Shown here in pieces: positions 6 through 54,046 of a stretch of DNA of 64,000 bases. Under the pieces are notes generated by a model that worked only from the letters and a program-made list of their open reading frames with translations, had not been told where the DNA came from and searched no databases. The translations under genes and the position numbers were made by a program. Position 1 is the first letter of the stretch. Every line of letters begins with the position of its first letter. The DNA is taken from positions 124,001 through 188,000 of IMG/VR virus record IMGVR_UViG_3300042541_001760; one strand, 5' to 3'.

Positions 6-473
6 ATGAATATTTTCGTTTTAGATTGGGATATTAAACAGTGCGCAAAAGACCATTGTGATAAACATTGCGTTAAAATGATTCTTGAGACCGCTCAATT
101 ATTGTGTGGTGTTCATTGGTTGTTGGGTAATGACGCTCCATATAAATTGAGTCATAGGAATCACCCGTGTTCTATATGGACAAGAAAATCATTAAGTAAC
201 TATCTTTGGTTATGTGAATTAGGTTTAGAGTTATGTAACGAGTATACTCGTAGGTATGGTAAAACTCATAAGACTAAACAAATACTTGAATGGTGTTTAG
301 ATAATAAACCTCAAATCCCTGATATAGGTTTTACAGAACCATCATTAGCAATGCCTGACGATTATAAAACTAATGATGTTGTTGAATCTTATAGGAGATA
401 CTACGTTAATGATAAGAAAGAAATTGCTAAGTGGAAAGATGGATATGTTCCAAGTTGGTTTAAATTATCCTAA
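6..473 (+). CDS. Pyrimidine-dimer DNA glycosylase / T4 endonuclease V-like protein
   Basis: MNIFVLD...HCDKHCVKMILETAQLL...HRNHPC...W and YRRYY...K...W motifs typical of the phage Pyr_excise/DenV-like family. Confidence 0.75.
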   Translation: MNIFVLDWDIKQCAKDHCDKHCVKMILETAQLLCGVHWLLGNDAPYKLSHRNHPCSIWTRKSLSNYLWLCELGLELCNEYTRRYGKTHKTKQILEWCLDNKPQIPDIGFTEPSLAMPDDYKTNDVVESYRRYYVNDKKEIAKWKDGYVPSWFKLS

Positions 474-1357
474 GCAGTACAACCACCATCTCTACAGAAT
501 AAATTCTTTTCTTTTTCTCTTCTTGTTTTTAATCCTGAAAATCCGGCTTTATCTGAGTTGAATGTGAGTATCCTTTTTGATGCCTCAGCAAATTTACCCG
601 CTCTAACATAATCAATTAAATCGTTTTGGGCTGAATCTCCTCGTATTGATCCACATCCAGCATTAAACGTTAAAGAAGTTAAAGCATCAAACATGCTTTG
701 AGTTATCGTTCTATTAATGTTATTTCTTTTCCACTCACCGAATATTCTTTTAACGCAATCGGATGCGGTTTTAGTATCCTTTTGTAATAATTGCTCCGCC
801 TTTGATTGGTTTATTGTCATATTAGGTTTTACATTTTCACCTGTATGACCAAATCCTACGGTCCATTTATCACCTGGTACTCTATAAGATTTTAACATAG
901 GTTGACAATTAGAACCCGGTTTACCTTCTTCACATTTCAAAAACTTAATAAGTTCTTCGGAAGGTTGTAATGATAAAGGGTCTAGTAATGTTTTTTGTTG
1001 TGATGATGTCTTTTTTTGTGATGGTAATGTATTTTGTTTTTTACCATTTAAAATTAGATTTAAAAGTCCGTTGGTTTTAAAAATATTGTAAATTGTTTTT
1101 TTCTCCTCATCGGTAAACTCATAAGGTTCTAATATTATTTGTTGTAGATTTTGACTATGATTCTTAACTAATATATTATTAACAGAATTTAAAATATTCT
1201 GATTATTTATTAGTTTTAATGCGGAATACATTTTTTCTTCATCCGTACCAACACCACTAACAGACGACCATATAGTGTCGGCAATTTCTTGGGGGTTCGG
1301 GGATTTTAATTGCTCAATTAAAATTTTACACTGACTTTCATTAATTATTAACTTCAT
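470..1357 (-). CDS. Phage lysozyme (GH24) with N-terminal leader and annexin-like repeat
   Basis: C-terminal EEG...Y...WTVGFGH...FDALTSLTFNAG...GLKTRREKE is T4/P21-type muramidase; N-terminal MKLIINESQ leader and SGVGTDEEKMYSAL segment. Confidence 0.85.
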   Translation of the reverse strand: MKLIINESQCKILIEQLKSPNPQEIADTIWSSVSGVGTDEEKMYSALKLINNQNILNSVNNILVKNHSQNLQQIILEPYEFTDEEKKTIYNIFKTNGLLNLILNGKKQNTLPSQKKTSSQQKTLLDPLSLQPSEELIKFLKCEEGKPGSNCQPMLKSYRVPGDKWTVGFGHTGENVKPNMTINQSKAEQLLQKDTKTASDCVKRIFGEWKRNNINRTITQSMFDALTSLTFNAGCGSIRGDSAQNDLIDYVRAGKFAEASKRILTFNSDKAGFSGLKTRREKEKNLFCRDGGCTA

Positions 1358-6013: not shown

Positions 6014-6541
6014 TTATAGGTAATCTACACTAATATTAAAACTTAAACCATTGTAGGGTTTATGTATCTTAGAATATATTGCCGATACTATATCACCTAT
6101 TTCATCACTTATTTCCCATAAGATATCTTCATACTCTTTATCACCCAAATTATTAAAATCAATACGATGTCCAGAATCAATTAAAGTCAGTTCTCCATCC
6201 ATTATTTGAGCCAAGACAGTTATATCTTCACCCCAATCACTACCATCTAATATTTCCATCATAAACCTAAATGAATACGACCCCATATTAACCACATCCG
6301 CATAGTCGTCTGTATTGAAAACTTTATTTTTAGTAATTCTGGTAAGATTACTTATTACATTATCCATACCACCAAAATACTCAATAAAAATCATTCTAAT
6401 AACCGCTTCATCAAATCCTGTAAGGATGGCTTTAACCACGGGATCATCAACTCTAGGTTTTTTACCTTGTAGTTTTATCTTATCGTAATAATTAAAAACT
6501 ACTTTTTTTAAAGGTTCGTATTCTTCCATACTAAAAATCAT
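6014..6541 (-). CDS. Hypothetical protein
   Basis: ORF 175 aa. Confidence 0.6.
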   Translation of the reverse strand: MIFSMEEYEPLKKVVFNYYDKIKLQGKKPRVDDPVVKAILTGFDEAVIRMIFIEYFGGMDNVISNLTRITKNKVFNTDDYADVVNMGSYSFRFMMEILDGSDWGEDITVLAQIMDGELTLIDSGHRIDFNNLGDKEYEDILWEISDEIGDIVSAIYSKIHKPYNGLSFNISVDYL

Positions 6542-7989
6542 ACCCCCCTAAGTATGTAAATTTTTTTCTAAGTTTCATCCCTGATATTTTAGAGAAATAT
6601 TTAGTTACGATCTTATTAATTTCGTCTTCATCAGTCGCTCTAAAAATACTTGATACTCTTTCTAATAATTGTAAAGATATAGACCATTTGTGTCCGGATT
6701 CACCATCCCCAATCTTTAAGTCAACAACAAATACTAATCTTTCCTTATCATCAAAATAAGCGACTCTTGTATTAAGTTGGTTTTTCTCCCCTTCTAATAC
6801 ACCTAAAATATTGTCAATGTATTTAGTTACTAAACTATATAATCTTTCTTCACTTATTACTATATTCATATGAATAAATAGTGTGAATATAATAAAAATT
6901 AACGCATCATTTCGTTAATAATATTCATAAGATAGGTTTGTTTTTCTGATAAAACTCTAATCCGTTTTAATTGGGTTTCATTTAAATCAAATGATTCTGA
7001 TTTAACTTGGGAAATTTGATTTCCTAAGTGGTGATATTCCGACATCAATTGGTCGTATTTTTTTGCTTTGTTCTCGTTGTCCATATTATGAAATATATGT
7101 GGTATGGTGTGTTAGTCAATAGATGTTAAACTGCAAAAAACGTAACATCAACATCATAACTTTTTTCAAACCATACAACTAAATCATTTTTATTAATAAA
7201 AGGAAATGCGGATTTTAACATTTGGTAAAAATCATTATGAATATGTAACTTTTCATCCTTAAAATCGTAATATAATACCAAGTCCTTATTAAGTGTTACC
7301 CAAATACTGGTTTCCTGATGGTCATGACCAAACTTTAAATTATTCATATAGTCATAGAAGATTTCCATCAACCGACCATTCTGAGATTCAGAAATTAGTA
7401 TCTTCATAATCGGCAATATTATCCGAATCTTCAGCCCATTGTGTAAAATAGTCCAATTCCATATTATAGGACATACCTATTGAATCCTTAACATATTGTT
7501 CAAACATATCTTCAATTCTATCTTCACTAACACCCAACTCCATTGCTTTTTCAATAATACTTTCAGGAACTTCCAGTGTAATATATTTTAATTCACCTTC
7601 TAATGGTTGTTCGCTAATAACTCTTTTAACTAAACGAGTTAAATCTTTTTCTGTTAATTTTATAATTTTTTTCATACGCTTGCTTTAGATATTTTAACAC
7701 CTACGGTCCTATATTCAGGAAAATTATCCTTAAACCAATTATAAATATCGTCTTGATCAATAAACACAAATATGGATGTTATTCTTTCATAGAATTTCAA
7801 CGATATGTAAAGATAATATTCACCTTCATAATCTTGTTTTAGTAAAAAAACAAAATCTTTACCGGACTCAAATGCTGGTATGCCGAGACCCAACCAATTA
7901 TCATTCACTTTTAAATTAAGTTTGGACATATAATCCTCAAAGTGTTTATATAACCTGTCTTTACGTTCTTGTGATATTATTATTTTCAT
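6531..7989 (-). CDS. Cluster of short leader-bearing hypothetical genes (6531-6869, 6899-7084, 7126-7407, 7388-7675, 7672-7989)
   Basis: Contiguous ORFs starting MNIVISEE, MKILISES, MKKIIKLTEKDL, MKIIISQE; 6899-7084 lacks a leader. Confidence 0.65.
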
Positions 7990-10038: not shown

Positions 10039-10833
10039 TTAAATATTTTTATCCTCTTTTAATATTCTGAATCTTAATAGTGGTTTTCCGTTAATTGTAA
10101 TATCACCCTTTTCATTTTTACCAATTGTCTTAACAATAACTTTTTTATTTTTAAACTTACCACCCATAACGACATCACCAACATTAATATCAAGTTTTAT
10201 CATTTCGGATAGGGGGTTATTTTGTGTTTTTAACTTATAGGCAACTATTTCATAAGCCTTTCTAAGGTCGTGACTCCAAGCGTTATCAAGCCATCCTTCA
10301 CTATATTCGTTTGAGTTGGATCTGATAAAATCCATCATTTCACCATCTGAAATTTTTTCAGGTATTTCTATCTCACCTGGACATATAGCACCTTTAAAAT
10401 CATAACTTTCACAATACGAAACTTCTATCTCAGGATGACCCATCTCCTCACCAAATTTAGTGGTATAGTTGTCGTCATACCACTCCGCAATAACATTTAA
10501 GACATAACTTTCTCTAATGGAAAATAACCTTTTAATGTCATCAATAATTTTTTTTGAAAAAACTATGTGTCCTTCATTAAAATTATGAAGTTCAGGACCG
10601 TCATCGTCTTCATCATTATTAAAATAATAAATCGATCTGGCAATTACAACACCGTTCTTACACCAGTGTTCATCAAGGTTACCATAAAATTCTTTAGGGT
10701 CACCGACAATCCTTTTAGCTCCGACCATTTGTTTATTTAGGTAAGATATAATAACCTTTTCCATATTAGCATTTGATCTAACATATTTTTTTTGACTTTC
10801 TTCTCGTAATACTTTTCTAATTAGGTCTTTCAT
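10039..10833 (-). CDS. Hypothetical leader-bearing two-module protein
   Basis: MKDLIRKVLREE leader; internal PLSE followed by a small beta-rich module (DINVGDVVMGGKFKNKK). Confidence 0.55.
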   Translation of the reverse strand: MKDLIRKVLREESQKKYVRSNANMEKVIISYLNKQMVGAKRIVGDPKEFYGNLDEHWCKNGVVIARSIYYFNNDEDDDGPELHNFNEGHIVFSKKIIDDIKRLFSIRESYVLNVIAEWYDDNYTTKFGEEMGHPEIEVSYCESYDFKGAICPGEIEIPEKISDGEMMDFIRSNSNEYSEGWLDNAWSHDLRKAYEIVAYKLKTQNNPLSEMIKLDINVGDVVMGGKFKNKKVIVKTIGKNEKGDITINGKPLLRFRILKEDKNI

Positions 10834-10836
10834 ATT

Positions 10837-11163
10837 TTAAGGGCAGTTATCTGAATATTTATCTCTAATTAAAGTTCCGTATTTCTCTTCAAGATAAGTA
10901 TTAATAATATCATAATACGATTCAAGAATTTCTGTATTTAAATTTTCATCTTCACCAAAATGACTTAAATACTTATGATAAAACATTTCAAAAACATACT
11001 GAAACACAACCTCAAAGAACGTATTTTCATTATCATATTCATCACAATTATATTCTAACATTTTATTGCTATATATTGACTCAAATTTAGTGGTCATAAT
11101 TTCGTCAACATAAGACAATCTCCTTAACACAAAACTTTGATTCTCATTAATTATAATCTTCAT
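10837..11163 (-). CDS. Hypothetical protein (paralog of 12820-13113)
   Basis: Shared VLRRL...CDxYD...YLxxKxG pattern; MKIIINE leader. Confidence 0.55.
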   Translation of the reverse strand: MKIIINENQSFVLRRLSYVDEIMTTKFESIYSNKMLEYNCDEYDNENTFFEVVFQYVFEMFYHKYLSHFGEDENLNTEILESYYDIINTYLEEKYGTLIRDKYSDNCP

Positions 11164-12393: not shown

Positions 12394-13415
12394 TTATTGT
12401 TCGTCTTCTTCAAAATAGATATCAATTATCTCATTCATAGACAAACCCAATTTATCAATACCACACATCTTCATAAACTCACGATCGGTAAGCCAACCGT
12501 CCTCATCAAACATCAGGTGGTCATCACCATTTATATGTTGTTGATATATATAAACCGCATCCTTATTCATAGTAATTAGATACATGGGACCATGATTATT
12601 TAAAAGATAATTAACTCTGTCAGTTGGAATTATGCCGTCAAAAGAGGATGGAACTTGATACCTATTTGTAATCATTTTAATTTTTCCTGTAAGGTCAAAA
12701 TTAAATTTGTTCCTCAAAAACTCTTTGAACTTAGATTGGTTAACTATATATTTCATTTATAGTAAATATATACTTAAAAGGTAATTTAATCTATTTATAT
12801 ATAAATAACTAACACAATTATGGATTATAGAGATAAACTTGATAGTAGAGTTCTTAGAAGGCTTAACGATGATGATTTGGAGTACGAATTTAATTTCCTA
12901 TTGGATGAAGATATGTCGGGGGTGGGATTCAACCCCTGTGATTATGATTACGTCGGTTATTTTGTTGAGGACGTATGTGAGGAACTAAGGGGTAGTTATC
13001 TTGATAATATTGAAATAAAGACAGACCCCAAGACAAGTGACTTTTTATATTCTTATCTTATTGATAAATTTGGGGATACCCTAGCGGAGATTTATTATAA
13101 GAGGAAATGTTAATTTGGTATGGTTGGATACATACTAAAATCGTAATTAAGTTTCTCGGATAAGTATTCCCTAAATATATCGGATAGGTCTCCGTAACTA
13201 ACACCGAAGAAAGAATGCATCTTAGCAAATAGTTCGTGGCTGACCAATATCCTATCCCTACGTAAAGTAATGTGAATTATGTACTCCTTATCATCACTAC
13301 TAATAACTAGATAATTTTCTTCTCTAAGTAAATCCTTATCAAATCCGCTAGCATCAAAATTGGTGTCCAACCACCTAAACAAAAACCCCTTAAATTTATC
13401 CGTTATTTCATTCAT
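12394..13415. CDS. Three short hypothetical genes (12394-12756 -, 12820-13113 +, 13110-13415 -)
   Basis: ORFs each preceded by TATTTA-type motifs. Confidence 0.6.
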
Positions 13416-14649: not shown

Positions 14650-15018
14650 TTAAACGTAACTACTATCGTTTGACTTTGATTTATTTTGTGTAAACTCCTC
14701 ACAAAAAGATTGAAAGTATTTATCACCTTCAGGGGTAAATTTGTATCTATAAAAATCTCTAAAATCGTCTTTTACTTTATGTCCTGGACAACTGTACCAA
14801 AATTCATGAACTTCTTCCCCTCCACTAGCTTTAAAGTATATATCAATACCTTTAGGTTCGGTACTATATACCGTAATGTTACTGAACAAGGCTCCTGTCA
14901 CATCATTTAACAATTTTAATTTTTTTCCAGATCCACCTTCATTATTGGATTGTTCACTTAGAACTCTTTTTACTAATCTAACTAGATCGTTTTCTGTTAA
15001 TCTTACAATTTTTCTCAT
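14650..15018 (-). CDS. Leader-bearing hypothetical protein
   Basis: MRKIVRLTENDLVRLVKRVLSEQ. Confidence 0.65.
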   Translation of the reverse strand: MRKIVRLTENDLVRLVKRVLSEQSNNEGGSGKKLKLLNDVTGALFSNITVYSTEPKGIDIYFKASGGEEVHEFWYSCPGHKVKDDFRDFYRYKFTPEGDKYFQSFCEEFTQNKSKSNDSSYV

Positions 15019-15058: not shown

Positions 15059-16330
15059 TTATGCAGTTGGGTTGGTGGGTGATGTATTATTTTGTTTTAG
15101 TGCCAATTGATTAATATTTTGCCACATTTGATTTACATCAGTAAAACCTCTTTGGGCCCAACATAAAAATAACCAATAGATATCTACACTAGATTTCTCT
15201 CTAGTAATATATGGTTTTATCATATCTAAAGTTATGTTCTGACCTGGTTTTATCCCTAGAAGCCGTCTAATACCGGTAATATTTGACATTTTTTCAGTTT
15301 CTCTACAAATATATCCAGGGTCATGGGCGTAGTCCTTAATGATTTCATTTTTTCTTGCATCTATAATTGATATATATTTTGGATCCACATTTAATTTTTT
15401 CGCCGCCGCGGTAATTTCTGGTGAATACGTTGTGGTTTTATTGGAAGGGTTATAAAGGAAACTACTTTTGATTTGTTCTTTTGATTTTTTTTCGGAATCA
15501 TTTTTACCAAAAACAGAAGATATTTTCTCTTCAGGATTAAGTGGTTTTATGTCATAAATCATATGTTGAATTTCATGTATCAATATTTCATCAATTTCTT
15601 CTTCGTACGAAGACGAAAAAGAACAATTTACATATATGTTCCCATCAGGTCCATTAACAAATGCTATAGCATCATCGTGATCCGGATGAATACCATTAAT
15701 TTTTATTGTTCTATCATTATAAAAATTTAATTTTATTTTATTAAGTAATTCAAAGTATTTTGGATAGTATAAGGTGACCGCATACGGTTTATCGATATAA
15801 TTTGACAAAAACTTCTTTTTAGTTATTGGATCTGAGAGCCAATCTCTCCACCATTTTATAGCTCCAGGTAATGACTTACTCCAAAGTGATTTACATGATG
15901 CCATATCTGTAGTTGTAACGGAGTATCCATCACCCCCTGATAGTCGGAAACCCTCCATAAAGGTAGTCATACCACCATTATTTTTCCCAAAATTTGCCGT
16001 AGTGAAAACATTTATGTTATGAAGCGTAGCGATTAGAGACTCAACATCTTCCGCATTATCCCTTTCATATTCTTCGTTAATCATCTCAAAAAAATCGGAA
16101 TATCCCGTTTTTTTGTCTTTAAATAATGTTAATAAATATTTGAACTCATTTTGGTTCTTCAATTTTTTTATGGCTGAGAGTACTCCATCCGGATCGGTTC
16201 CCCAACCCTCAACCGCATCAATTATTTCGTTATAAATGGTAATTACAGAACTATTTGATTGGTCTTCCATAATAACCCTTTTAACAATACGAGTTAAATC
16301 AGATTCCGTTAATTTTATAACTTTTTTCAT
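15059..16330 (-). CDS. Putative metallopeptidase with annexin-like repeat and N-terminal leader
   Basis: MKKVIKLTESDL leader; AVEGWGTDPDGVLSAI; ILIHEIQH zincin motif with downstream E. Confidence 0.55.
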   Translation of the reverse strand: MKKVIKLTESDLTRIVKRVIMEDQSNSSVITIYNEIIDAVEGWGTDPDGVLSAIKKLKNQNEFKYLLTLFKDKKTGYSDFFEMINEEYERDNAEDVESLIATLHNINVFTTANFGKNNGGMTTFMEGFRLSGGDGYSVTTTDMASCKSLWSKSLPGAIKWWRDWLSDPITKKKFLSNYIDKPYAVTLYYPKYFELLNKIKLNFYNDRTIKINGIHPDHDDAIAFVNGPDGNIYVNCSFSSSYEEEIDEILIHEIQHMIYDIKPLNPEEKISSVFGKNDSEKKSKEQIKSSFLYNPSNKTTTYSPEITAAAKKLNVDPKYISIIDARKNEIIKDYAHDPGYICRETEKMSNITGIRRLLGIKPGQNITLDMIKPYITREKSSVDIYWLFLCWAQRGFTDVNQMWQNINQLALKQNNTSPTNPTA

Positions 16331-16361: not shown

Positions 16362-17981
16362 TTAAAAATATTGATTCATAAAAAATTCTTTCGCTAATTC
16401 TCTTGCCTTACGTTCAAAATACTTGTTCACTTCGGGGTTATTACCAAGATAACTAAATATTCCACCTTCAAGTTCAATTAGACTATTTCCCGATTCATAA
16501 GAAACATCTTTCTTATTAAGATTAAAAGTATAACAATGATATTGTTCATAATTCTTTCTACCTTTATAATGAGCGGTTATCAATACACAAATACTTTGAC
16601 CGTCTTTTGTGTAGTATATATTACTTGCTCTTTTAATTTCTAATCGTATACCCAACCGATCAATAAATTTTTCAATAGCTCTATCCATATAAATAAATAC
16701 TCAGGATTACTTATTAAGTTCTTCATCCAATATCCTTCTTGATTCATTCACCACCCACATATCCAATTCATTATGTGAATGAAAAAATCTTAACAAAGGC
16801 ATTTCATCTTCAGTTATAAACCATATATCGCTAAGTTTAATTTGGTCGTCTGAATAAACGTTAAAATCCGCCAATGAGGACGTTTCTTCAGGAGTTAGGT
16901 AATATATTGTCTTAGGTTCAAATGATATTAAAATACTATAAACTGTTTTATCCCACTTTTCAACTACCATTATGGAGTGTGAGATATTATAATGTTTGAA
17001 AATTAAGGTTAATAAAGATCCCATATAATTAAATATAATAAAACGGTTATCCCCACTTAACAATCTCCCAACGAATCTCAGGTCGGCTCTTTGTGCCCTT
17101 CTTAACTTGTTTAAGGTCAACTAACGCCTCGGCCCTTGTCTCATATGATTTTGGTGGAGTGTCCATCTCGTCATCCATCCTTCTTCTAAATTCAGAAGAT
17201 GTGGGTATCATACTATAACCATCATCACCTGTATATATAAACATACCATTTCCATTAAGATGTCTAGGGTGAGCAACAATATAATATCGTTCTTCCATTT
17301 CATTAATAACCCTTTCAACAATCCTTGTTAAATCGGATTCCGTTAATCTTATAACTTTTTTCATAATATATAAATACCCAAAATCATACTTTTTTATTTA
17401 ATAAACACAACACCAACATACTTCATGTTAATACCAAGATATTCAAACATTTTTTTAAATTCGGACCTGATTACAGAGATGTGAACACCATCAGAGGTTA
17501 TATTTTTTTCTTCCTTTACTTCAGGTCTATAATATAATGACTCCGGCATTGGTGGTTTAGAGTAAACCTCAATTACGTAATCATAAATTTGATTATTTCT
17601 ATCATACCTAATTTTTACCTCAAATTCAAATGGTTCGGTAATGAAGTTTTTGGTAAGATATCTATTGCCCAACTTATTATAAAGTTTTTCTACCGTTGCG
17701 GATAATTCATTCAGATTCATAACAGATAAATATATTGTAAAATAAAAAACCCCATACAAAGATGGGGAATTTAATTAACCATTCATTTCGGTTAAGAACT
17801 CACTAACGATTTGGTGACACTCATCATCGGTTAAATCTTGATCATAAAAATCAATCTCATCAGGGGTTACGTTCCATTCATCCCAATTGGCCATAATTGT
17901 AAACTCCTTACCTTGTTCGGTCTCACCTTTAAACCAAACCGTCTTTGATTGTAGTTTTCCGTTTTCGTAATCTATATTCAT
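16362..17981 (-). CDS. Run of short hypothetical genes (16362-16688, ~16707-17030, 17047-17364, 17394-17759, 17775-17981)
   Basis: ORF track; 17047-17364 carries the MKKVIRLTESDL leader. Confidence 0.55.
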
Positions 17982-19189: not shown

Positions 19190-19444
19190 TCAATTTGTAT
19201 CACTTTCATAAGAACTAAATATTCTATCACCGAAATATTTATTATACTCTTTTGGCCTGTAATGTCTTAAAAGATTTAAACCTTCTAAAACGGCCTCAAT
19301 ATTCAGATTATTTAAATCGTGTTTAAAGTCTTCGGCACCCCCAAAATACTCATTAATATTTGAGGAATCAAATTTATCTTCTTTAATGACCCTCTTTACC
19401 AATCTAACAAGATCGGACTCTGTTAATCTTATAACTTTTTTCAT
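19190..19444 (-). CDS. Leader-bearing small protein
   Basis: MKKVIRLTESDLVRLVKRVIKED. Confidence 0.6.
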   Translation of the reverse strand: MKKVIRLTESDLVRLVKRVIKEDKFDSSNINEYFGGAEDFKHDLNNLNIEAVLEGLNLLRHYRPKEYNKYFGDRIFSSYESDTN

Positions 19445-30021: not shown

Positions 30022-30550
30022 TTAACTTTTCCTATGTAAGACAAAAGTTTTTATTCCGAACATATTTAGGTAATGGGTCAGAACTTCTCTGAGATTACCA
30101 CTATATTTATACCCTGGTTGTATAACATAAATCACCCTAAGAGCGTTTTTAGATTGGATCATATCATCCAATTTTATTTCGTAATTACCACTATAACCAT
30201 CAACTTTAATGACTTTACCGATTAGTGATTTTTTAGCCAACTCTATGTTCATAACTTTATTTTTTGTAAACCTACAAAAAATAATTGACATTACCAAATT
30301 ATTCAGAAGAGTCAACGTATATAATAAAATTAACAATACCAAACATATTTAAATGGTATTTTAGTACTTCACGAATATAACTCGCACTTGAGAATTTATC
30401 TTTTTCAAATCGTATTATGATTTCATACTTGTCGTCATGCGGTAATTTTATTATCGCCATTATTAATAAATAATATTCGCCAAATATCTTATCATTTATC
30501 TTAAAGACCTTATCTTTGACGTATTTCTTGGCAATATCAACATTTGTCAT
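30022..30550 (-). CDS. Tandem paralog pair of small proteins
   Basis: Both have AKK...KV.K...REVL..xLNMFGI. Confidence 0.6.
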
Positions 30551-31749: not shown

Positions 31750-32391
31750 TTACACTTTCAATCTGTTCTCAATAATTTTACAATAAGTCCCATCAACTTC
31801 ATAACCGATCGTATCATAACCCAAATCCTGAGCAACCTTTAATGTTGTTCCACTACCGGCAAAGATATCAATAATGGTTTCACCCTCCTTTGCGGTTGTT
31901 AAGATTATTTTCCTAATAACTTCTTCGGGTATCTGACAAGGATGTTCAGTTTTTTCCTTACTTACATTCTTAACTTGGTTAATCTCCCACCAATCATATA
32001 ACTTAGCACCCGTCTTACCCTCAGATATTCTCTGTTGTATTCTTTTATCTTTAAGGTTTTTATATGGTTGTAGAACTTTCTTAAAGTCAGGTTTACATCC
32101 CCACCAAGAGATTAATCTGCTCTGTTTCCCTGTGTTTGAATTATATACCCAACAAACAACTTGGTCACACTTTTCCTTGATTGCTCTCGGTAATAAATTA
32201 ATTGTTTCTTCGGGGTAATGAATGATAACACAAGGCGTTGGAATGTGTGATAACAACTCCACATAATCCTCCTCGGACATTCTATCTTTATATTCGTTAT
32301 ATGCGTAACCTTGATTGTATGGTGGGTCGGTTATTACTAAACCATCAGGTATTTCACACTCTCTAAAATCTTCATTAATTATTTTAACCAT
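31750..32391 (-). CDS. DNA methyltransferase (N6-A/N4-C, beta class)
   Basis: TDPPYN catalytic motif; HPCQIPE; DIFAGSGTT SAM-binding motif. Confidence 0.9.
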   Translation of the reverse strand: MVKIINEDFRECEIPDGLVITDPPYNQGYAYNEYKDRMSEEDYVELLSHIPTPCVIIHYPEETINLLPRAIKEKCDQVVCWVYNSNTGKQSRLISWWGCKPDFKKVLQPYKNLKDKRIQQRISEGKTGAKLYDWWEINQVKNVSKEKTEHPCQIPEEVIRKIILTTAKEGETIIDIFAGSGTTLKVAQDLGYDTIGYEVDGTYCKIIENRLKV

Positions 32392-32414: not shown

Positions 32415-34486
32415 CTAATAAGTCAAACCTCCCATTACTGGTGTTACATTATCTAAGTTATAAGTTTCTTTCAACCACCCCTTCAAAATTAATCTCTCAT
32501 CATCCTGACTAAGATGGAAAATAGATTCAACTTTTGACCAAATATGTTTATAACTAATAAAAATAAATCCATTTTTTTCATTGTGTTCCATTACTAACTC
32601 ATGATCGGAATTCAAATAAAATACTTTATTAGAAAAATTATTATATTTGTTTGGTGTTAAATTACCGTAGTGTTGTTTTAACCACTTGATAGCCACCCTA
32701 TATAACTGATCCTTATTTACCTGTATGTCCATAATCTATAAATACCTTAATTAAGGACTATAAGGTCTAAAACCACCCAATTTGTAAGTCTCTTTCAACC
32801 ATTTATGAATAATTGATTCGCTATCTTCATAACTAAGATTAAAAATAGTTTTTATTTGTTCAAAAATTAAATCGTCAATATAAATATATTTACCATATTT
32901 AGCTTTAAGGTGGGACATCATAATCTCATCACTTGAATTTACATAAAACATTTCGTCAGGATGATCATCAAACTCCTTTTGTTTTAAATCACCATAGTAT
33001 ATGTTTAACCACTTTATAGCCACTCTCTCTAACTGATCCTTATTTACTTGTATGTCCATAATATATAAATACCTTAACTATCCCAATCCGTAATCTCATC
33101 AAACCCCCAATTATTCTTTAGTGGTGTTACATCATCATCCAATCCGTATGTTTCTTTTAACCAAACGTTAATAATTGATTGTACTTCCAAATATTTAAGA
33201 TGAAAAATGGAGTGAAGTTTTGACCATATACGGTCATTATCAATAAGAATATCTTTACGATGTCTAAGAATGTAATCGTATTCCATTATTATTTCATTTT
33301 TGTTATTAACAAAAAAGATAGTATATGGCACGTTTGTATGTTTTTTTGGTGTTAGATTACCATAGTGTTGATTTAACCACTTTATAACTACTCTCTCTAA
33401 CTGATGTCTATTTACCTGTATGTCCATAATATCTTATTCAAAACCAAAATTTAATGCTAAACGAGTCTGGCTTACCGTTATTCCCTCTAAGTTATATGTT
33501 TCTTTCAACCATACCTCTAATATTGATTGGATTTCATTATACTTAATATGGAAGATGTCTGTTATTTTTGACCAAAGGATATCACTATCAACCCAAACAG
33601 TGGGTTCATATTTATTATCCTTTTCATATTCTAATACGGTTACCCCTCGTTTATCTACGTAAAATACTTTACCAGGGATATTCAAATACGTTTTTGTTGT
33701 TAAGTCACCATAGTATATGTTTAACCACTTGATAACTACCCTAAACATTTGTTCTTTATTTACCTGTATGTCCATTATTTATTAGTTTTTTTTATTAAGG
33801 CTATCCGCAACCTTCCTCCAACGGAACTCGTAAAACCCTGAATCACTGGAAGGTCTAACATCTTTTAATCCGTAAGTATCTCTCAACCATACCTGCATAA
33901 TTGATTGAGTATCCATTTCATTAAGGTGAAAGATAGATTCTATCATTAACCAAATATCAGTATCAACCCAAACATCTTCATGTTCTGGAACCCACTCCAT
34001 TATAACTTTATTTTTGGGATCAACATAAAATAACGATTCAGAATAAGTATTATGTTCTACAGGTCTTAAATTACCAAAGTATTTATTTAACCACTTGATA
34101 ACTACCCTATATACTTGTTCTTCATTTACCTCTATATCCATAATTTATCCTAAATATTATATTGTATGACCTTGCCAACTTGTATCCTCTAACGGCATCA
34201 CACCCTCCAATTTGTATGTTTCTTCCAACCAAGCACTCATAATCGCTCTATTTTCACGAAGGCTAAGATGAAAAATGGATTCAACTTTTGACCAAATACC
34301 TTCTCTATCAATCCAAACACGATTGGTTTCTTGATTGTGCTCTATCATAATATAACTACCCGAATTTACATAAAATACTTTATTGGGGTAATCTTTATGC
34401 GTCTTTGGTGTTAAGTTTCCGTAGTGTTTGTTTAACCACTTGATAACTACCCTAAATACTTGTTCTCTATTTACCTGTATGTCCAT
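32415..34486 (-). repeat. Tandem array of six MDIQVN paralogs (32415-32732, 32751-33059, 33074-33427, 33434-33775, 33782-34141, 34157-34486)
   Basis: All start MDI[QE]VN..Q..RV.IKWL..xxGxL and contain IFxL...WLxxTYxL; the 5' nucleotide block ATGGAYATACARGTAAATA is conserved. Confidence 0.9.
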
Positions 34487-34541
34487 TATCCAATAAATAT
34501 ATAATAAAACAAAAAACCCCAATTAAAGTTGGGGTTTTATA

Positions 34542-35248
34542 TTAATCTTCGGGTACATTTAGATATATCCAAGATATATCAGTATACTCTATTAAGAGAT
34601 ACAATGTATTAGTTTCCAAATTATGACCTACATAAGTGAAGCATCTTTTACCATCGGGATCAACACATAAAAACTTTGTGGACTCAGATAGTTTTTCACT
34701 ACCACCGATTGTTCTGTAAACTTGTTCGTCTTTTGAATATATTGTTATTGTGTTATTAAGATATTTTATTAATACATTTGTCTTGATAGATTCACTCCAA
34801 TCAACTTTACCTGTTGAGTCATTTTTAATTCCGTAACTGAAACTATAAGACCTCACATATGTTGGTTGTGAGAATCCGTAGGTTGTTAATAAAAGTAATA
34901 GTAATATTGTTAGTATTTTTTTCATAATATGTATTAGTTATTTATTTTCCATTTTGTTTCCTCTTTATTGGTTGTCCAATATATTTTTAGGTCAGCCTCA
35001 TTTGGATCAGTAACAAAAAATACTTTACGACCCCTTGAATATGTGATGGGGGCAAGGTAAATACATCCAGGTCTTGTACATTCAAGTTCTGACTTTACTT
35101 TAACACCAATGATGTCAGCCTCTGACTTTACTTTTGTTTCATATACAAGGTAGTCAGCCTGTAATCTGTTCTTAATAGGTTTCCAAATCTGACCAAAAGA
35201 TGTTATGGTGATTAACATTAATACCACAGAAAAAATCGCTTTAGACAT
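34542..35248 (-). CDS. Two secreted Bacteroidota-like proteins
   Basis: Signal peptides ending GFSQ and SFGQ; the second has repeated EAD motifs. Confidence 0.6.
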
Positions 35249-52297: not shown

Positions 52298-52732
52298 TTA
52301 ATCCACCAAATTTAATTGTCGGGTAATATCTCTCTCCTTGATTGTGTTGCGTTTATCATACTCTTTCTTACCCTTACAAACAGAAATCTCCATCTTTAAG
52401 AATCCCCTCTCATTTAAGTATAATCTTGTTGGTATGATTGTTACCCCCTTTATAAGTTCTTTCTTTAACTTATCCAACTCTTTGCGTTTGAGTAATAACT
52501 TACGATGTCTTAACGGATCGTGTGAGTATGCGGTGTTGTTACCGGGTATGTTCATCCCAACAACGAATAGTTCATCACCTTGAAACATACAATAACTATC
52601 TACGAGTGATACCTGACCCGCTCTGATTGCCTTTACTTCGGATCCCACCAATTGGATACCCGCATGTTCCTGACGAAGAAAGTGATAATCAAATTTTGCC
52701 TTTTTATTAACAATATTTATTGTCTGTTTCAT
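52298..52732 (-). CDS. smpB: SsrA-binding protein SmpB
   Basis: NKKAKFDY...AGIQLVGSEVKAIR...HDPLRHRKLLL..KEL..L...G.TIIP..LY...KGKKEYDKR..IKERD. Confidence 0.95.
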   Translation of the reverse strand: MKQTINIVNKKAKFDYHFLRQEHAGIQLVGSEVKAIRAGQVSLVDSYCMFQGDELFVVGMNIPGNNTAYSHDPLRHRKLLLKRKELDKLKKELIKGVTIIPTRLYLNERGFLKMEISVCKGKKEYDKRNTIKERDITRQLNLVD

Positions 52733-52929: not shown

Positions 52930-53624
52930 TTATCGTCCTTTGGGATAAACAAAATCACCTTCAAATTTTTTTACTCTTAGATTAAACAGATCCATTTTGT
53001 AAGTTTCTTTCAACCACACAGGAATAATTGATTTAACATCATCATTATGAAGGTGAAAAAAGTTTACTAAATGTGACCAAATATAATTATCACTAACAAA
53101 AACTTCCCAATAAGGTGTGGAAAATTGTAATAAAATTTGATTTTCGGAATCAATAAAAAATGTGTCGTTGGGATAATCCTCGTGTTTCCTTAGCGTTAAA
53201 TCACCATAGTGTTTATCTAACCACTTGATAACTACTCTTTCTAACTGATGTTTATTTACCTGTATGTCCATAATATATAAATACCTTAATCATTTTCCAA
53301 CCATGCGGTTGGAATGTCCTTGATACTTACAGGTCTTACTCCCTCTAAGTTGTAATCCTCCTCCATCCATACTCTCATAACTGATTGAGTGTCATCATAG
53401 TTAATGTGAAATAATGATTCAATTTTTGACCAAATTTCGTCATAATGAACATAAACATTATTATATTTTTTATCGTATTCCATCATAACATAATTGTTTG
53501 AATTTATGTAAAATACTGAGTTAGGGTCATTCTTATCTTTTTTTGGTATTAAGTTACCGTAGTATTTATTTAACCACTTGATAACTACTCTTTCTAATTG
53601 GTCTTTATTTACCTGTATGTTCAT
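52930..53624 (-). repeat. Two further MDIQVN paralogs (52930-53271, 53286-53624)
   Basis: Same N-terminal and C-terminal motifs as the 32.4-34.5 kb array. Confidence 0.9.
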
Positions 53625-54046
53625 TGTCTTACACTCAACACTTTTAATATTATCTCCTTCATTTCATTACCCAACGGACTAGGAAGATTATCCGCAGTAA
53701 AATAACCACAATCGGTATGTTCCTCACCATCTTTCGCATTATCCAAGTCAGGTGACACCTCCTCATTTACATCATATAGGAATAAACTCATTACCCCCTT
53801 TAATTTTGTGGTGTCTCTGTTATATCTCTTGATACCACCAATATAACTAAGGTCGCCCGGTGATACCTCAATCATCGTTTCTTCATATAACTCACGAACT
53901 GCGCAAGTTAATTTATCTTCATTGGGTTCTTGGTGACCACAAGGAACTGACCATTCGCCAGGTAAACTCTCATAGGCGTTTCTTTTACACAAAAGAACTT
54001 TGTCCTCAAAACGTATTAAAACACCGGAATACTGCTTATATTTCAT
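53621..54046 (-). CDS. NUDIX hydrolase
   Basis: CGHQEPNEDKLTCAVRELYEETMI nudix box. Confidence 0.85.
   Translation of the reverse strand: MKYKQYSGVLIRFEDKVLLCKRNAYESLPGEWSVPCGHQEPNEDKLTCAVRELYEETMIEVSPGDLSYIGGIKRYNRDTTKLKGVMSLFLYDVNEEVSPDLDNAKDGEEHTDCGYFTADNLPSPLGNEMKEIILKVLSVRQ

What the first reader, a model, noticed from the sequence alone, without database searches (positions are those of the whole stretch)
32415..34486. Tandem array of MDIQVN paralogs with conserved ends and hypervariable middles (6 here, 2 more at 52.9-53.6 kb)
Seen: eight ~105-120 aa genes at ~340 bp periodicity. They share a conserved ~60 nt 5' block (ATGGAYATACARGTAAATA...GTAGTTATCAAGTGGTT), conserved W/F/Y anchors, and divergent loops and tails. 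Both clusters lie next to enzyme genes (a MTase, NUDIX). Inference: an accordion-like diversified family, such as inhibitors or binders of variable host defence proteins, with the 5' block acting as a recombination anchor.
Basis: partly seen in the sequence, partly recalled or inferred. Interest (0 to 1): 0.7.

Follow-up and report, generated by a model that had tools for sequence, protein, structure and literature searches.

The report
Shuffled small-protein gene family in lake phage
A large T4-like phage from lakes carries 16 to 20 copies of one small, unannotated protein with no solved-structure match; related phages gain, lose and swap the middle of these genes while every copy keeps the same lineage-specific front end, which fits a kit of interchangeable binding proteins whose targets are unknown.

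Summary
Six intact minus-strand genes (102-119 aa) lie head to tail at 32415-34486, and two more at 52930-53624. The 261-kb T4-like lake phage holds 16 close copies at five sites plus four distant ones, its largest gene family. The family is known only from phages. It has no Pfam, PHROG or PDB match, and a confident AF2 model (helix, four strands, two helices, strand) matches no solved fold. Only core hydrophobic residues are conserved, so it is probably a binder and not an enzyme.

Copy number differs at all five sites among strains whose flanks are 89-98% identical. Two deletion junctions fall in the conserved leader and 5' block. Between two phage lineages the gene bodies are up to 98-100% identical, while the first ~28 codons stay lineage-specific (about 50-60% identical).

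The middles are not hypervariable. Orthologues are under purifying selection (pN/pS 0.09 in the N block, 0.42 in the body), the paralogues are old, and there is no reverse transcriptase. The methyltransferase neighbour is coincidental.

The best reading is a modular binder: a common N-terminal handle joined to an exchangeable specificity body, made with early or middle genes. A counter-defence or host-takeover role is inferred, not shown.

The parts
34157..34486 (-). Paralogue m06 (109 aa), first gene of the six-copy array
   Evidence: ORF; profile E 6e-50. The start is taken at the ATG that gives MDIQVN.
33782..34141 (-). Paralogue m05 (119 aa)
   Evidence: A 305-nt metatranscriptome contig spans the m06/m05 junction.
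33434..33775 (-). Paralogue m04 (113 aa)
   Evidence: Its body is 83-93% identical to lineage-B copies, while its N block is only 47-67% identical.
33074..33427 (-). Paralogue m03 (117 aa)
   Evidence: The exact protein is found in 11 contigs from other samples; every contig long enough to span the array shows the same six-gene order.
32751..33059 (-). Paralogue m02 (102 aa)
   Evidence: It is absent from strain contig L164, with the junction in the leader and 5' block.
32415..32732 (-). Paralogue m01 (105 aa), last gene of the array
53286..53624 (-). Paralogue m08 (112 aa). Its start overlaps the NUDIX stop by 4 nt.
   Evidence: AF2 model with pLDDT 90.4.
52930..53271 (-). Paralogue m07 (113 aa)
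   Evidence: In L116 a single m08/m07 recombinant copy replaces the pair.
13110..13415 (-). Distant family member (101 aa)
   Evidence: E 4.8e-4 with the close profile; E 1.4e-8 with the broad profile.
10039..10833 (-). Distant member: a 264-aa protein containing the domain
   Evidence: Broad profile E 5.8e-6; sequence.
6531..6869 (-). Distant family member
   Evidence: Broad profile E 7.6e-6.
7126..7407 (-). Distant family member (weak)
   Evidence: Broad profile E 3.9e-4.
34513..34538 (-). Terminator-like hairpin, ending 26 nt upstream of the m06 start (its T tail runs closer)
   Evidence: 10-bp stem followed by a T run.
31750..32391 (-). N6/N4 DNA methyltransferase just downstream of the array (context only)
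   Evidence: PF01555, E 1.6e-28. None of 80 related loci carries the family.
53621..54046 (-). NUDIX hydrolase just upstream of m08, with overlapping stop and start (context)
   Evidence: PF00293, E 1.4e-16; overlap seen.

Best explanation
Shown. This is a phage-only multigene family encoding a roughly 100-residue alpha/beta domain. The order of elements is N-terminal helix, four-stranded beta meander, two helices, a short last strand, and a free tail. The family evolves by birth, death and cassette exchange. Whole units are gained and lost by unequal recombination at the conserved leader and 5' block and at the conserved 3' block (WLEETYKLEGVTP). Gene bodies (about codons 28-100) move between phage lineages, while the first ~28 codons stay the same in every copy of a lineage. 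Each copy is intact and under purifying selection, strongest in the N block. The only positions conserved across the wide family are hydrophobic or aromatic core positions, so the domain is not an enzyme.

Inferred. The N-terminal helix is a common handle that all paralogues of one phage use to dock to one lineage-specific partner. The exchangeable body is a specificity module that binds different targets by stoichiometric binding. The genes sit in, and are translationally coupled to, early/middle-type gene blocks (NUDIX; just upstream of gp32-UvsX-RNaseH). They are therefore probably made inside the infected cell early in infection. The most likely role is host takeover or counter-defence against variable host (probably Bacteroidota) or rival-phage proteins, with the strain-to-strain cassette repertoire tracking local hosts.
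For: There are 16 intact copies at five sites, the largest family in about 362 ORFs, and 20 with a broader profile. The family is phage-only. The family profile finds over 248 proteins (all 120 listed unannotated bar one spurious name) and 926 representative clusters at E<=1e-3. A motif scan found none in 185,579 bacterial and archaeal genomes, and the ESM Atlas clusters are 96-100% viral.

The AF2 model has pLDDT 90.4. No PDB fold matches it: Foldseek best E 0.4 and VIA-align best Z 4.7. Conserved columns across the broad family are core residues only.

Copy number varies at every site among strains with 89-98% identical flanks. Junctions were mapped in the 5' block and at a 3' end. A remnant of the 3' block lies in a spacer.

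On the gene body, lineage-B copies interleave with lineage-A copies, and monophyly of lineage B is rejected (p-AU 3e-6). One body is 98-100% identical across lineages while the N block is about 50-60% identical.

Orthologue pN/pS is 0.09 in the N block, 0.42 in the body and 0.47 in the tail. Among paralogues, pS in the N block is 0.46 against 0.52-0.54 elsewhere, so the block is held by selection on the protein.

Context: the m08 start overlaps the NUDIX stop, and the four-copy array lies directly upstream of gp32, UvsX, RNaseH, ClpP, a DnaB-like helicase and ribonucleotide reductase. Natural fusions with 2-5 domains in one chain, and one with a lysozyme C-terminal half, suit a modular binding domain.
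Against: No binding partner, target or phenotype is known, so the function is inferred from evolutionary pattern alone. The six-copy array has the same composition in at least six independent samples, so part of the repertoire is stable. pN/pS is below 1 everywhere, so there is no direct sign of an arms race in the body. AF2 packs the N helix against the domain as part of the fold. Its conservation could therefore be structural, although that would not explain why it differs between lineages while the bodies are interchangeable. Expression timing is inferred from gene neighbours. The only RNA evidence is one short metatranscriptome contig, which could be DNA carry-over. Lineage-specific N blocks could also arise from old gene conversion followed by drift.
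Confidence: 0.4

Rival explanations
1. These are packaged internal (ejection) proteins like the T-even IPs. The conserved N block would be a capsid-targeting leader recognised by the lineage's own scaffold core. The diverse bodies would be injected with the DNA to block host restriction or defence enzymes.
For: The phage is T4-like: Gp23 major capsid protein and gp21-type prohead protease. [quoted passage not shown] Here the N block is shared by all copies and is lineage-specific, the bodies are exchangeable, the proteins are about 100 aa, and one array follows a NUDIX gene. From memory, the T4 ipII/ipIII genes lie near nudE; this is a lead, not a test.
Against: The 28-residue N block is predicted as a fold-integral helix at pLDDT about 97. 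No conserved L/I-x-E cleavage motif is present: E11 occurs in 69% of the phage's own copies and is V in lineage B. No unrelated ORF in the genome carries the N block. Isoelectric points range from 4.9 to 9.25 and are not uniformly basic. No fold match to any PDB chain, IPI* included, was reported. The arrays sit among early/middle-type genes.
Confidence: 0.15
2. These are accessory regulators or chaperones for the phage's own processes, for example small adaptors for replication or nucleotide-metabolism machinery. Copy number would drift nearly neutrally because the paralogues are partly redundant.
For: The arrays are embedded in replication and nucleotide-metabolism blocks. Selection is purifying throughout. 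The six-copy array is stable across samples. The shared N block would fit a shared phage partner.
Against: Complete related jumbo phages (G007, G008) that share the methyltransferase and the Clp ATPase lack the family entirely, so it is not part of a core process. Near-identical bodies shared across lineages whose flanks are about 70% identical point to selection for acquiring new cassettes.
Confidence: 0.15
3. These are immunity-type or superinfection-exclusion proteins. On this view they form an array of antidotes against polymorphic toxins or effectors of competing phages or bacteria, like the tandem immunity-gene arrays of polymorphic toxin systems.
For: They are tandem arrays of small, diversified, non-catalytic alpha+beta paralogues that turn over by cassette. 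Secreted or lipoprotein-like accessory genes lie just upstream of the focal array.
Against: No toxin gene or toxin domain was noticed beside any of the arrays examined. No similarity to SUKH or Imm families appears in Pfam at E<1. PADLOC finds nothing beyond one chance-level AbiEii match (E 0.012, 12.6 bits).
Confidence: 0.1
4. These are adaptors that deliver different substrates to the phage-encoded Clp protease (ClpP plus a ClpA/B/C-like ATPase), with the N helix docking to the unfoldase.
For: The genome encodes ClpP and a 684-aa Clp-type ATPase. In another phage contig (L123) family members lie near a Clp-type ATPase and an HSP20 gene.
Against: The two do not co-occur. Two complete relatives with the ATPase lack the family, and a 215-kb, 73%-complete relative with five family members lacks the ATPase. 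No ClpS-like or MecA-like fold match was found.
Confidence: 0.05
5. This is repeated DNA without protein function, or an assembly artefact.
For: Short repeat-rich contigs such as L158 and L137 join different arrays and may be chimeric.
Against: All 16 ORFs are intact. pN/pS is 0.09-0.47 between orthologues. The identical six-gene order was assembled independently from at least six samples and is seen in lake metagenomes from 2017 to 2025. The predicted fold is confident.
Confidence: 0.02

Closest known systems
T-even phage internal proteins (IPI, IPII, IPIII and the polymorphic IP loci) with a capsid-targeting sequence
   Same: Both occur in T4-like phages. Both are several small (~100 aa) genes that share a conserved N-terminal segment while the rest is diverse. 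In both, the repertoire differs between related phages. The IPs are the precedent that such sets act as dedicated inhibitors of host defence nucleases (PMC3012670).
   Different: Here the bodies are homologous to each other and share one fold, whereas the IPs are unrelated proteins. The N block is 28 residues and is predicted to be part of the fold. No L/I-x-E processing site is conserved. The charge of the copies is mixed. There are 16-20 copies instead of about 3. No fold or sequence similarity was found.
Gene accordions (tandem amplification under selection, as in poxviruses (from memory) and the T4 amplification in 10.1101/2022.04.14.488369, listed)
   Same: Both are head-to-tail tandem copies, with copy number changing by unequal recombination among close relatives.
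   Different: Accordions are recent, near-identical amplifications that act through dosage. Here the copies are old (39-55% aa identity, synonymous sites near saturation), each is separately maintained, and the nearest paralogues are not neighbours. This is birth-and-death evolution with cassette exchange, not dosage amplification.
Phage tail-fibre / receptor-binding-protein cassette exchange (conserved N-terminal anchor, swapped distal part); from general knowledge
   Same: Both have the same two-module logic: a lineage-specific N-terminal part kept by the resident phage, and a horizontally exchanged distal specificity part, with breakpoints at conserved boundaries.
   Different: These are 100-aa soluble-looking proteins in early/middle gene blocks, present in many copies. 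They show no similarity to fibre or spike folds.
Tandem immunity-gene arrays of polymorphic toxin systems (SUKH/Imm families); from general knowledge
   Same: Both are arrays of small, non-catalytic, diversified alpha+beta paralogues with rapid turnover.
   Different: No linked toxin was found. No sequence match to those families appears at E<1. No bacterial member was found by the motif scan.

Membership tests
T-even internal proteins (capsid-targeting-sequence proteins) | An N-terminal leader shared by otherwise unrelated packaged proteins | tested here: not met
   The N block occurs only on the 16 homologous paralogues. A relaxed motif scan of all six frames found only two other ORFs, and these carry a looser MK[LI]IINE start.
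T-even internal proteins (capsid-targeting-sequence proteins) | A prohead-protease cleavage site (L/I-x-E) ending the leader | tested here: not met
   No conserved Glu-containing motif is present. E11 occurs in 69% of the phage's own copies and is replaced by V in lineage B. The helix is predicted to be part of the fold.
T-even internal proteins (capsid-targeting-sequence proteins) | Presence in the virion and ejection with the DNA | not testable with these tools
   No isolate or virion proteome exists for this metagenomic phage.
T-even internal proteins (capsid-targeting-sequence proteins) | Encoded by a T4-like phage with a gp21-type prohead protease | tested here: met
   Gp23 (PF07068, E 4e-63); Peptidase_S77 (E 2e-24).
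Gene accordion (recent tandem amplification) | Head-to-tail copies whose number varies among close relatives | tested here: met
   Copy number ranges 1-2, 2 to at least 5, 1-3, 3-5 and 5-6 at the five sites.
Gene accordion (recent tandem amplification) | Copies nearly identical, reflecting recent amplification for dosage | tested here: not met
   Among paralogues pS is 0.53 and pN 0.31. The closest pair has pN 0.18 and its members are not adjacent.
Diversity-generating retroelement target | A linked reverse transcriptase and template repeat | tested here: not met
   No RVT_1 match anywhere in the 261-kb record.
Any curated protein family (Pfam, PHROGs, NCBIfam, PADLOC) or solved fold | A significant profile or structural match | tested here: not met
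   No hit better than E 0.012. PDB profile search best E 0.066. Foldseek PDB best E 0.4. VIA-align wide best Z 4.7.
Polymorphic-toxin immunity arrays (SUKH/Imm) | Homology to the immunity families and linkage to a toxin gene | tested here: not met
   No Pfam match. The neighbours are a methyltransferase, NUDIX, gp32, CHU_C/PKD proteins and secreted small proteins.

The most novel reading that the evidence does not exclude
This is a previously undescribed two-module specificity system in T4-like phages. A lineage-specific N-terminal helix would plug every paralogue into one common phage or host machine. A library of horizontally traded ~70-residue body cassettes would supply different target specificities. 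It would be a phage-encoded combinatorial repertoire of binders built on a new fold, maintained and reshuffled across lake phage populations to track host defences.
Probability: 0.25. Interest if true: 0.8.

Novelty: new variant of a known kind. Interest (0 to 1): 0.6.

Why it matters
Multicopy families of small proteins with no annotation fill the plastic regions of large phages, and few have any mechanistic handle. This family offers three. First, it has a confident fold with no solved relative. Second, it has a clear two-part gene architecture whose parts have different evolutionary histories. Third, natural strain series show units being added, deleted and swapped. If the bodies prove to be target-specific inhibitors, the family would be a ready-made library of binders against Bacteroidota defence or housekeeping proteins. 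It would also be a second example, after the T-even internal proteins, of a phage keeping a constant handle on a diversified counter-defence payload. The family also needs care in metagenome assembly and in strain-level analysis of lake phages, because the arrays break assemblies and can create chimeras.

Tried and rejected
- Curated family libraries: Pfam, PHROGs, NCBIfam and PADLOC scans of the paralogues and of longer relatives gave nothing significant.
- Isolated phages: tblastn against 50,697 phage records found no match.
- Structure searches: the PDB profile search, Foldseek against PDB and VIA-align wide gave no credible match. The weak MCM N-terminal domain rows (Z up to 4.7) sit in the noise. 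AFDB, BFVD and ESM Atlas matches are only unannotated relatives.
- Homodimer prediction of m08: 'no answer', score 0.00. This is not evidence either way.
- Clp-adaptor idea: rejected for lack of co-occurrence.
- DGR idea: rejected, no reverse transcriptase.
- Methyltransferase linkage: rejected, 0 of 80 related loci carry the family.
- The secreted protein upstream of the array has no relatives in viral contigs, so it could not be used to find diverged versions of the focal array.
- Logan contigs laid on the array are too fragmented, at about 5x depth, to call structural variants. The two roughly 1.14-kb skip joints have sides of 30 nt or less and were not used.
- Sigma-70 promoter scan: no enrichment over shuffles.
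- Tandem Repeats Finder does not detect the array.
- A literature search for a described family gave nothing relevant.
- Contigs L158 and L137 join different arrays. They may be assembly chimeras and were not counted as rearrangements.
Full report
**Observation**

The window is bases 124001-188000 of a 261,052-bp linear IMG/VR virus record. The record has about 31% G+C and is estimated to be 89% complete.

Six intact ORFs of 102-119 aa lie head to tail on the minus strand at 32415-34486. Two more lie at 52930-53624. Starts are 327-368 bp apart, and the gaps between genes are 6-20 bp. A degenerate 18-nt word taken from their 5' ends occurs eight times in the window, against 0.01 expected by chance.

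The eight proteins are 39-52% identical to the first one. They share 17 invariant columns, including W17, L18, F38, F72, W86 and Y91. A profile search of the whole record finds 16 strong, intact copies at five places. In genome coordinates these are 156.4-158.5 kb (six copies), 176.9-177.6 kb (two), 188.3-189.4 kb (three, just past the window's end), 192.8 kb (one) and 256.8-258.1 kb (four). All are on the minus strand.

An all-against-all comparison of about 362 ORFs shows this is by far the largest paralogue family in the genome; the next has seven members. A broader profile adds four distant members inside the window, at 6531-6869, 7126-7407, 10039-10833 and 13110-13415.

**What the phage is**

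The record encodes a T4-type major capsid protein (Gp23) and a gp21-type prohead protease. It also encodes gp32, a RecA/UvsX-like protein, RNaseH, a DnaB-like helicase, ribonucleotide reductase, ClpP and a Clp-type ATPase. It carries seven tRNA genes.

The array sequence is held by lake-water metagenomes from 2017 to 2025. Start codons lack Shine-Dalgarno sequences. A close relative's locus syntenic with this genome has CHU_C (a sorting domain linked, from general knowledge, to type IX secretion) and PKD proteins. The secreted proteins nearby have signal peptides of the Bacteroidota kind. Together these point to a Bacteroidota host; this is an inference.

**The protein**

No curated library recognises the family. 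Pfam, PHROGs, NCBIfam and PADLOC give no hit better than E 0.012. No isolated phage in a 50,697-record collection encodes it.

The family is nevertheless large. A search with the family profile found more than 248 proteins; all 120 listed are unannotated apart from one spurious name. In a library clustered at 50% identity, 926 representative clusters reach E<=1e-3. A motif scan found none in 185,579 bacterial and archaeal genomes. The matching ESM Atlas clusters are 96-100% viral.

AlphaFold2, given a 125-sequence alignment, produced a confident model with pLDDT 90.4 and pTM 0.81. Its elements are helix 7-22, strands 26-30, 36-40, 46-51 and 56-60, helices 61-72 and 76-91, and strand 97-101, followed by a low-confidence tail. 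Foldseek against the PDB found nothing better than E 0.4. An exhaustive VIA-align run against 48,161 chains found nothing above Z 4.7. The only good structural matches are unannotated relatives, including about ten proteins labelled only 'uncultured Caudovirales phage', whose near-consecutive accessions suggest one source.

Across 113 diverse relatives, the conserved positions are L18, G23, L25, F38, Y39, Y50, I64, W65, F72, W86 and Y91. These are core hydrophobic or aromatic residues plus one glycine. No conserved polar constellation exists, so the domain is most likely a non-catalytic scaffold or binder. The 16 copies contain no cysteine, and their isoelectric points range from 4.9 to 9.25.

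Natural fusions exist:
- two to five domains in a single chain (P0174, P0131, P0125);
- a 460-residue unknown N-terminal region followed by the domain (P0205);
- the C-terminal half of a phage lysozyme followed by the domain, in a T4-like context (P0262).

In several relatives the C-terminal motif (EETYKLxGVTP) is repeated in tandem, and it recurs in the tail of the phage's own copy m11.

**Selection**

Among the 16 paralogues, the first 28 codons are much more conserved at the protein level (pN 0.13) than the body (0.31-0.39) or the tail (0.57). Synonymous divergence, however, is almost as high in the N block (pS 0.46) as elsewhere (0.52-0.54). The N block is therefore held by selection on the protein, not by ongoing homogenisation of the DNA. 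The copies are old, and the closest pairs (m09/m14, m08/m16) are not neighbours.

Thirteen comparisons of orthologous copies with related strains (not all independent) give pooled pN/pS of 0.09 for the N block, 0.42 for the body and 0.47 for the tail. Every copy is thus under purifying selection, strongest at the N terminus. Nothing is hypervariable in the strict sense, and there is no reverse transcriptase that could drive targeted hypermutation.

**Copy-number dynamics**

Related contigs whose flanks are mostly 89-98% identical to this genome show unit-level differences at every site.

| Site (genome kb) | Copies here | Copies in related contigs |
|---|---|---|
| 176.9 | 2 | L116 has one |
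| 188-189 | 3 | L025, L033, L034 and L035 have two; L153 has four; L142 has at least five |
| 192.8 | 1 | L033 has two; the more distant lineage-B contig L027 has three |
| 256.8-258.1 | 4 | L023 and L024 have the same four, at 100% identity; L021 has three; L019 and L018 lack m13; L022 has an extra, different copy; L020 has two positions filled by different cassettes; L029 has five |
| 156.4-158.5 (focal) | 6 | Same six-gene order in at least six independent samples; L164 has five |

- At 176.9 kb, the junction of the single copy in L116 lies within the first ~20 nt of the coding 5' block.
- At 188-189 kb, the two-copy contigs have a junction at a short homology at the 3' end of the gene.
- At 192.8 kb, the counts come.
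- At 256.8-258.1 kb, the counts come.
- At the focal array, L164 lacks m02, and its junction lies in the conserved 17-nt leader and 5' block.
- A remnant of the conserved 3' block lies in the 90-nt spacer between m14 and m13, which looks like the scar of a lost unit.

**Two modules with different histories**

A second phage lineage (B: loci L026, L027, L029, L030, L161, L163) has flanking genes mostly about 68-80% identical to this genome. It carries arrays at the same sites, but all its copies begin MDIIVDRPQLVR..LLYLN instead of MDIQVNKxQLERVVIKWLN.

A maximum-likelihood tree was built from the body alone (residues 29-96). In it, lineage-B copies interleave with lineage-A copies in several well-supported pairs, and monophyly of B is rejected (p-AU 3e-6).

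At the DNA level the pattern is sharp.
- L137_1234 (A) and L163_6353 (B) are about 50-60% identical over the first ~85 nt of the gene. They are about 98% identical from there to the end of the GVTP block, and unrelated beyond it.
- L153_255 and L163_6001 are 100% identical over nt 121-270 but about 50-60% identical in the N block.
- The body of m04 in the focal array is 83-93% identical to three lineage-B copies, while its N block is 47-67% identical.

Bodies are therefore exchanged between lineages, with breakpoints at the end of the N block and at the conserved 3' block. Each lineage keeps its own N block on all its copies.

**Context**

The methyltransferase downstream of the focal array has 240 relatives in viral contigs, the 80 best 73-85% identical. 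None of the 80 loci examined carries the family nearby. Two complete jumbo relatives of 326-336 kb that share that methyltransferase and the Clp ATPase have no family member at all. The family is therefore accessory, and the enzyme neighbours carry no signal.

What is consistent is the kind of region the arrays occupy:
- m08 overlaps the stop codon of a NUDIX gene;
- m11 overlaps the stop of the preceding CHU_C-domain gene;
- the four-copy array lies directly upstream of gp32, UvsX and RNaseH on the same strand.

A terminator-like hairpin precedes the focal array. One 305-nt metatranscriptome contig, 97.7% identical, spans the m06/m05 junction. This is weak evidence for transcription across the junction.

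**Interpretation**

Shown:
- a phage-only, non-catalytic domain with no match to a solved structure;
- expansion to 16-20 copies;
- each copy maintained by purifying selection;
- evolution by gain and loss of units and by exchange of the body cassette at conserved boundaries;
- an N-terminal block that is the most constrained part and is specific to the phage lineage.

Inferred: the N helix is a common handle for one lineage-specific partner, and the body carries the specificity. The proteins are probably made with early or middle genes and act by binding. Counter-defence or host takeover is the most plausible use, because accessory status, strain-level turnover and horizontal trading of cassettes are the marks of such genes. 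I put this at about 0.4.

The nearest precedent is the T-even internal proteins. [quoted passage not shown] As a membership claim this fails on the features that could be tested: no cleavage motif, the leader is part of the fold, no unrelated proteins carry the leader, the charge is mixed, and there is no structural similarity. As a functional analogy it remains a live rival, at about 0.15.

A classic gene accordion is the wrong label, because the copies are old and individually maintained. A Clp-adaptor role, an immunity-array role and a housekeeping role are less likely, for the reasons given under the rival explanations.

**Verdict**

'Hypervariable middles' and the significance of the enzyme neighbours are not supported. 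The function remains inferred.

Noticed in passing
window 52298-52732 (-): The phage encodes a full-length SmpB homologue (PF01668, E 8e-47). ARAGORN finds seven tRNA genes but no tmRNA anywhere in the 261-kb record. The phage may use or interfere with the host's trans-translation system.
   Followed up: partly
window 7388-7675, 14650-15018, 15059-16330, 17047-17364, 19190-19444; also genome 46932-47420 and 65958-66347: A second paralogue family with seven members, one of them 423 aa, is concentrated in the same plastic region as the four distant MDIQVN-family members.
   Followed up: no
window 31750-32391 (-): The N6/N4 DNA methyltransferase has 240 relatives in viral contigs; the 80 best are 73-85% identical at the protein level and include complete 326-336-kb genomes. 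It is unusually well conserved and widely shared for a phage accessory gene.
   Followed up: partly
window 34500-34840: In four lake metagenomes the summed contig depth over the terminator and the 3' part of the secreted-protein gene reaches 100-180. The rest of the stretch is at about 5. Loose ends at 34492 lead into a different gene that starts MKIVITEQQ. A much more abundant relative appears to share this short segment.
   Followed up: no
window 34542-34925 and 34934-35248 (-): Two small proteins with signal peptides of the Bacteroidota kind lie just upstream of the array. One is a DUF6150/Septknot protein. They may be secreted or surface accessory proteins.
   Followed up: no
window 30022-30550 (-): Two overlapping ORFs look like another small paralogue pair; both end in a ...REVL.(Y)HLNMFGI... 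motif.
   Followed up: no
window 470-1357 (-) and 10837-11163 (-): The phage lysozyme (PF00959) has an N-terminal extension of about 150 residues that starts MKLIINESQ. A 108-aa ORF starts MKIIINENQ. Distant family members elsewhere begin MK.II(T/N)E as well. A profile comparison found no homology between the lysozyme ORF and the family.
   Followed up: partly
genome 66.9-69 kb and L184:6722-7399 (genome 252721-253398): The phage encodes both a Clp/Hsp100-type ATPase (684-aa ORF) and ClpP. Related 326-336-kb phages also have the ATPase.
   Followed up: partly
L158 (1452 bp) and L137 (2644 bp): These short metagenome contigs join sequence from different arrays: m06-m05 to the flank downstream of m13, and the m12 site to m16-m14-like copies. 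They are either real rearrangements between arrays or assembly chimeras across the repeats.
   Followed up: no
L116:5423-5800 versus window 52930-53271: A one-base indel near the 3' end changes the tail of the m07 orthologue from 113 to 125 aa. This fits tails that are largely unconstrained.
   Followed up: partly
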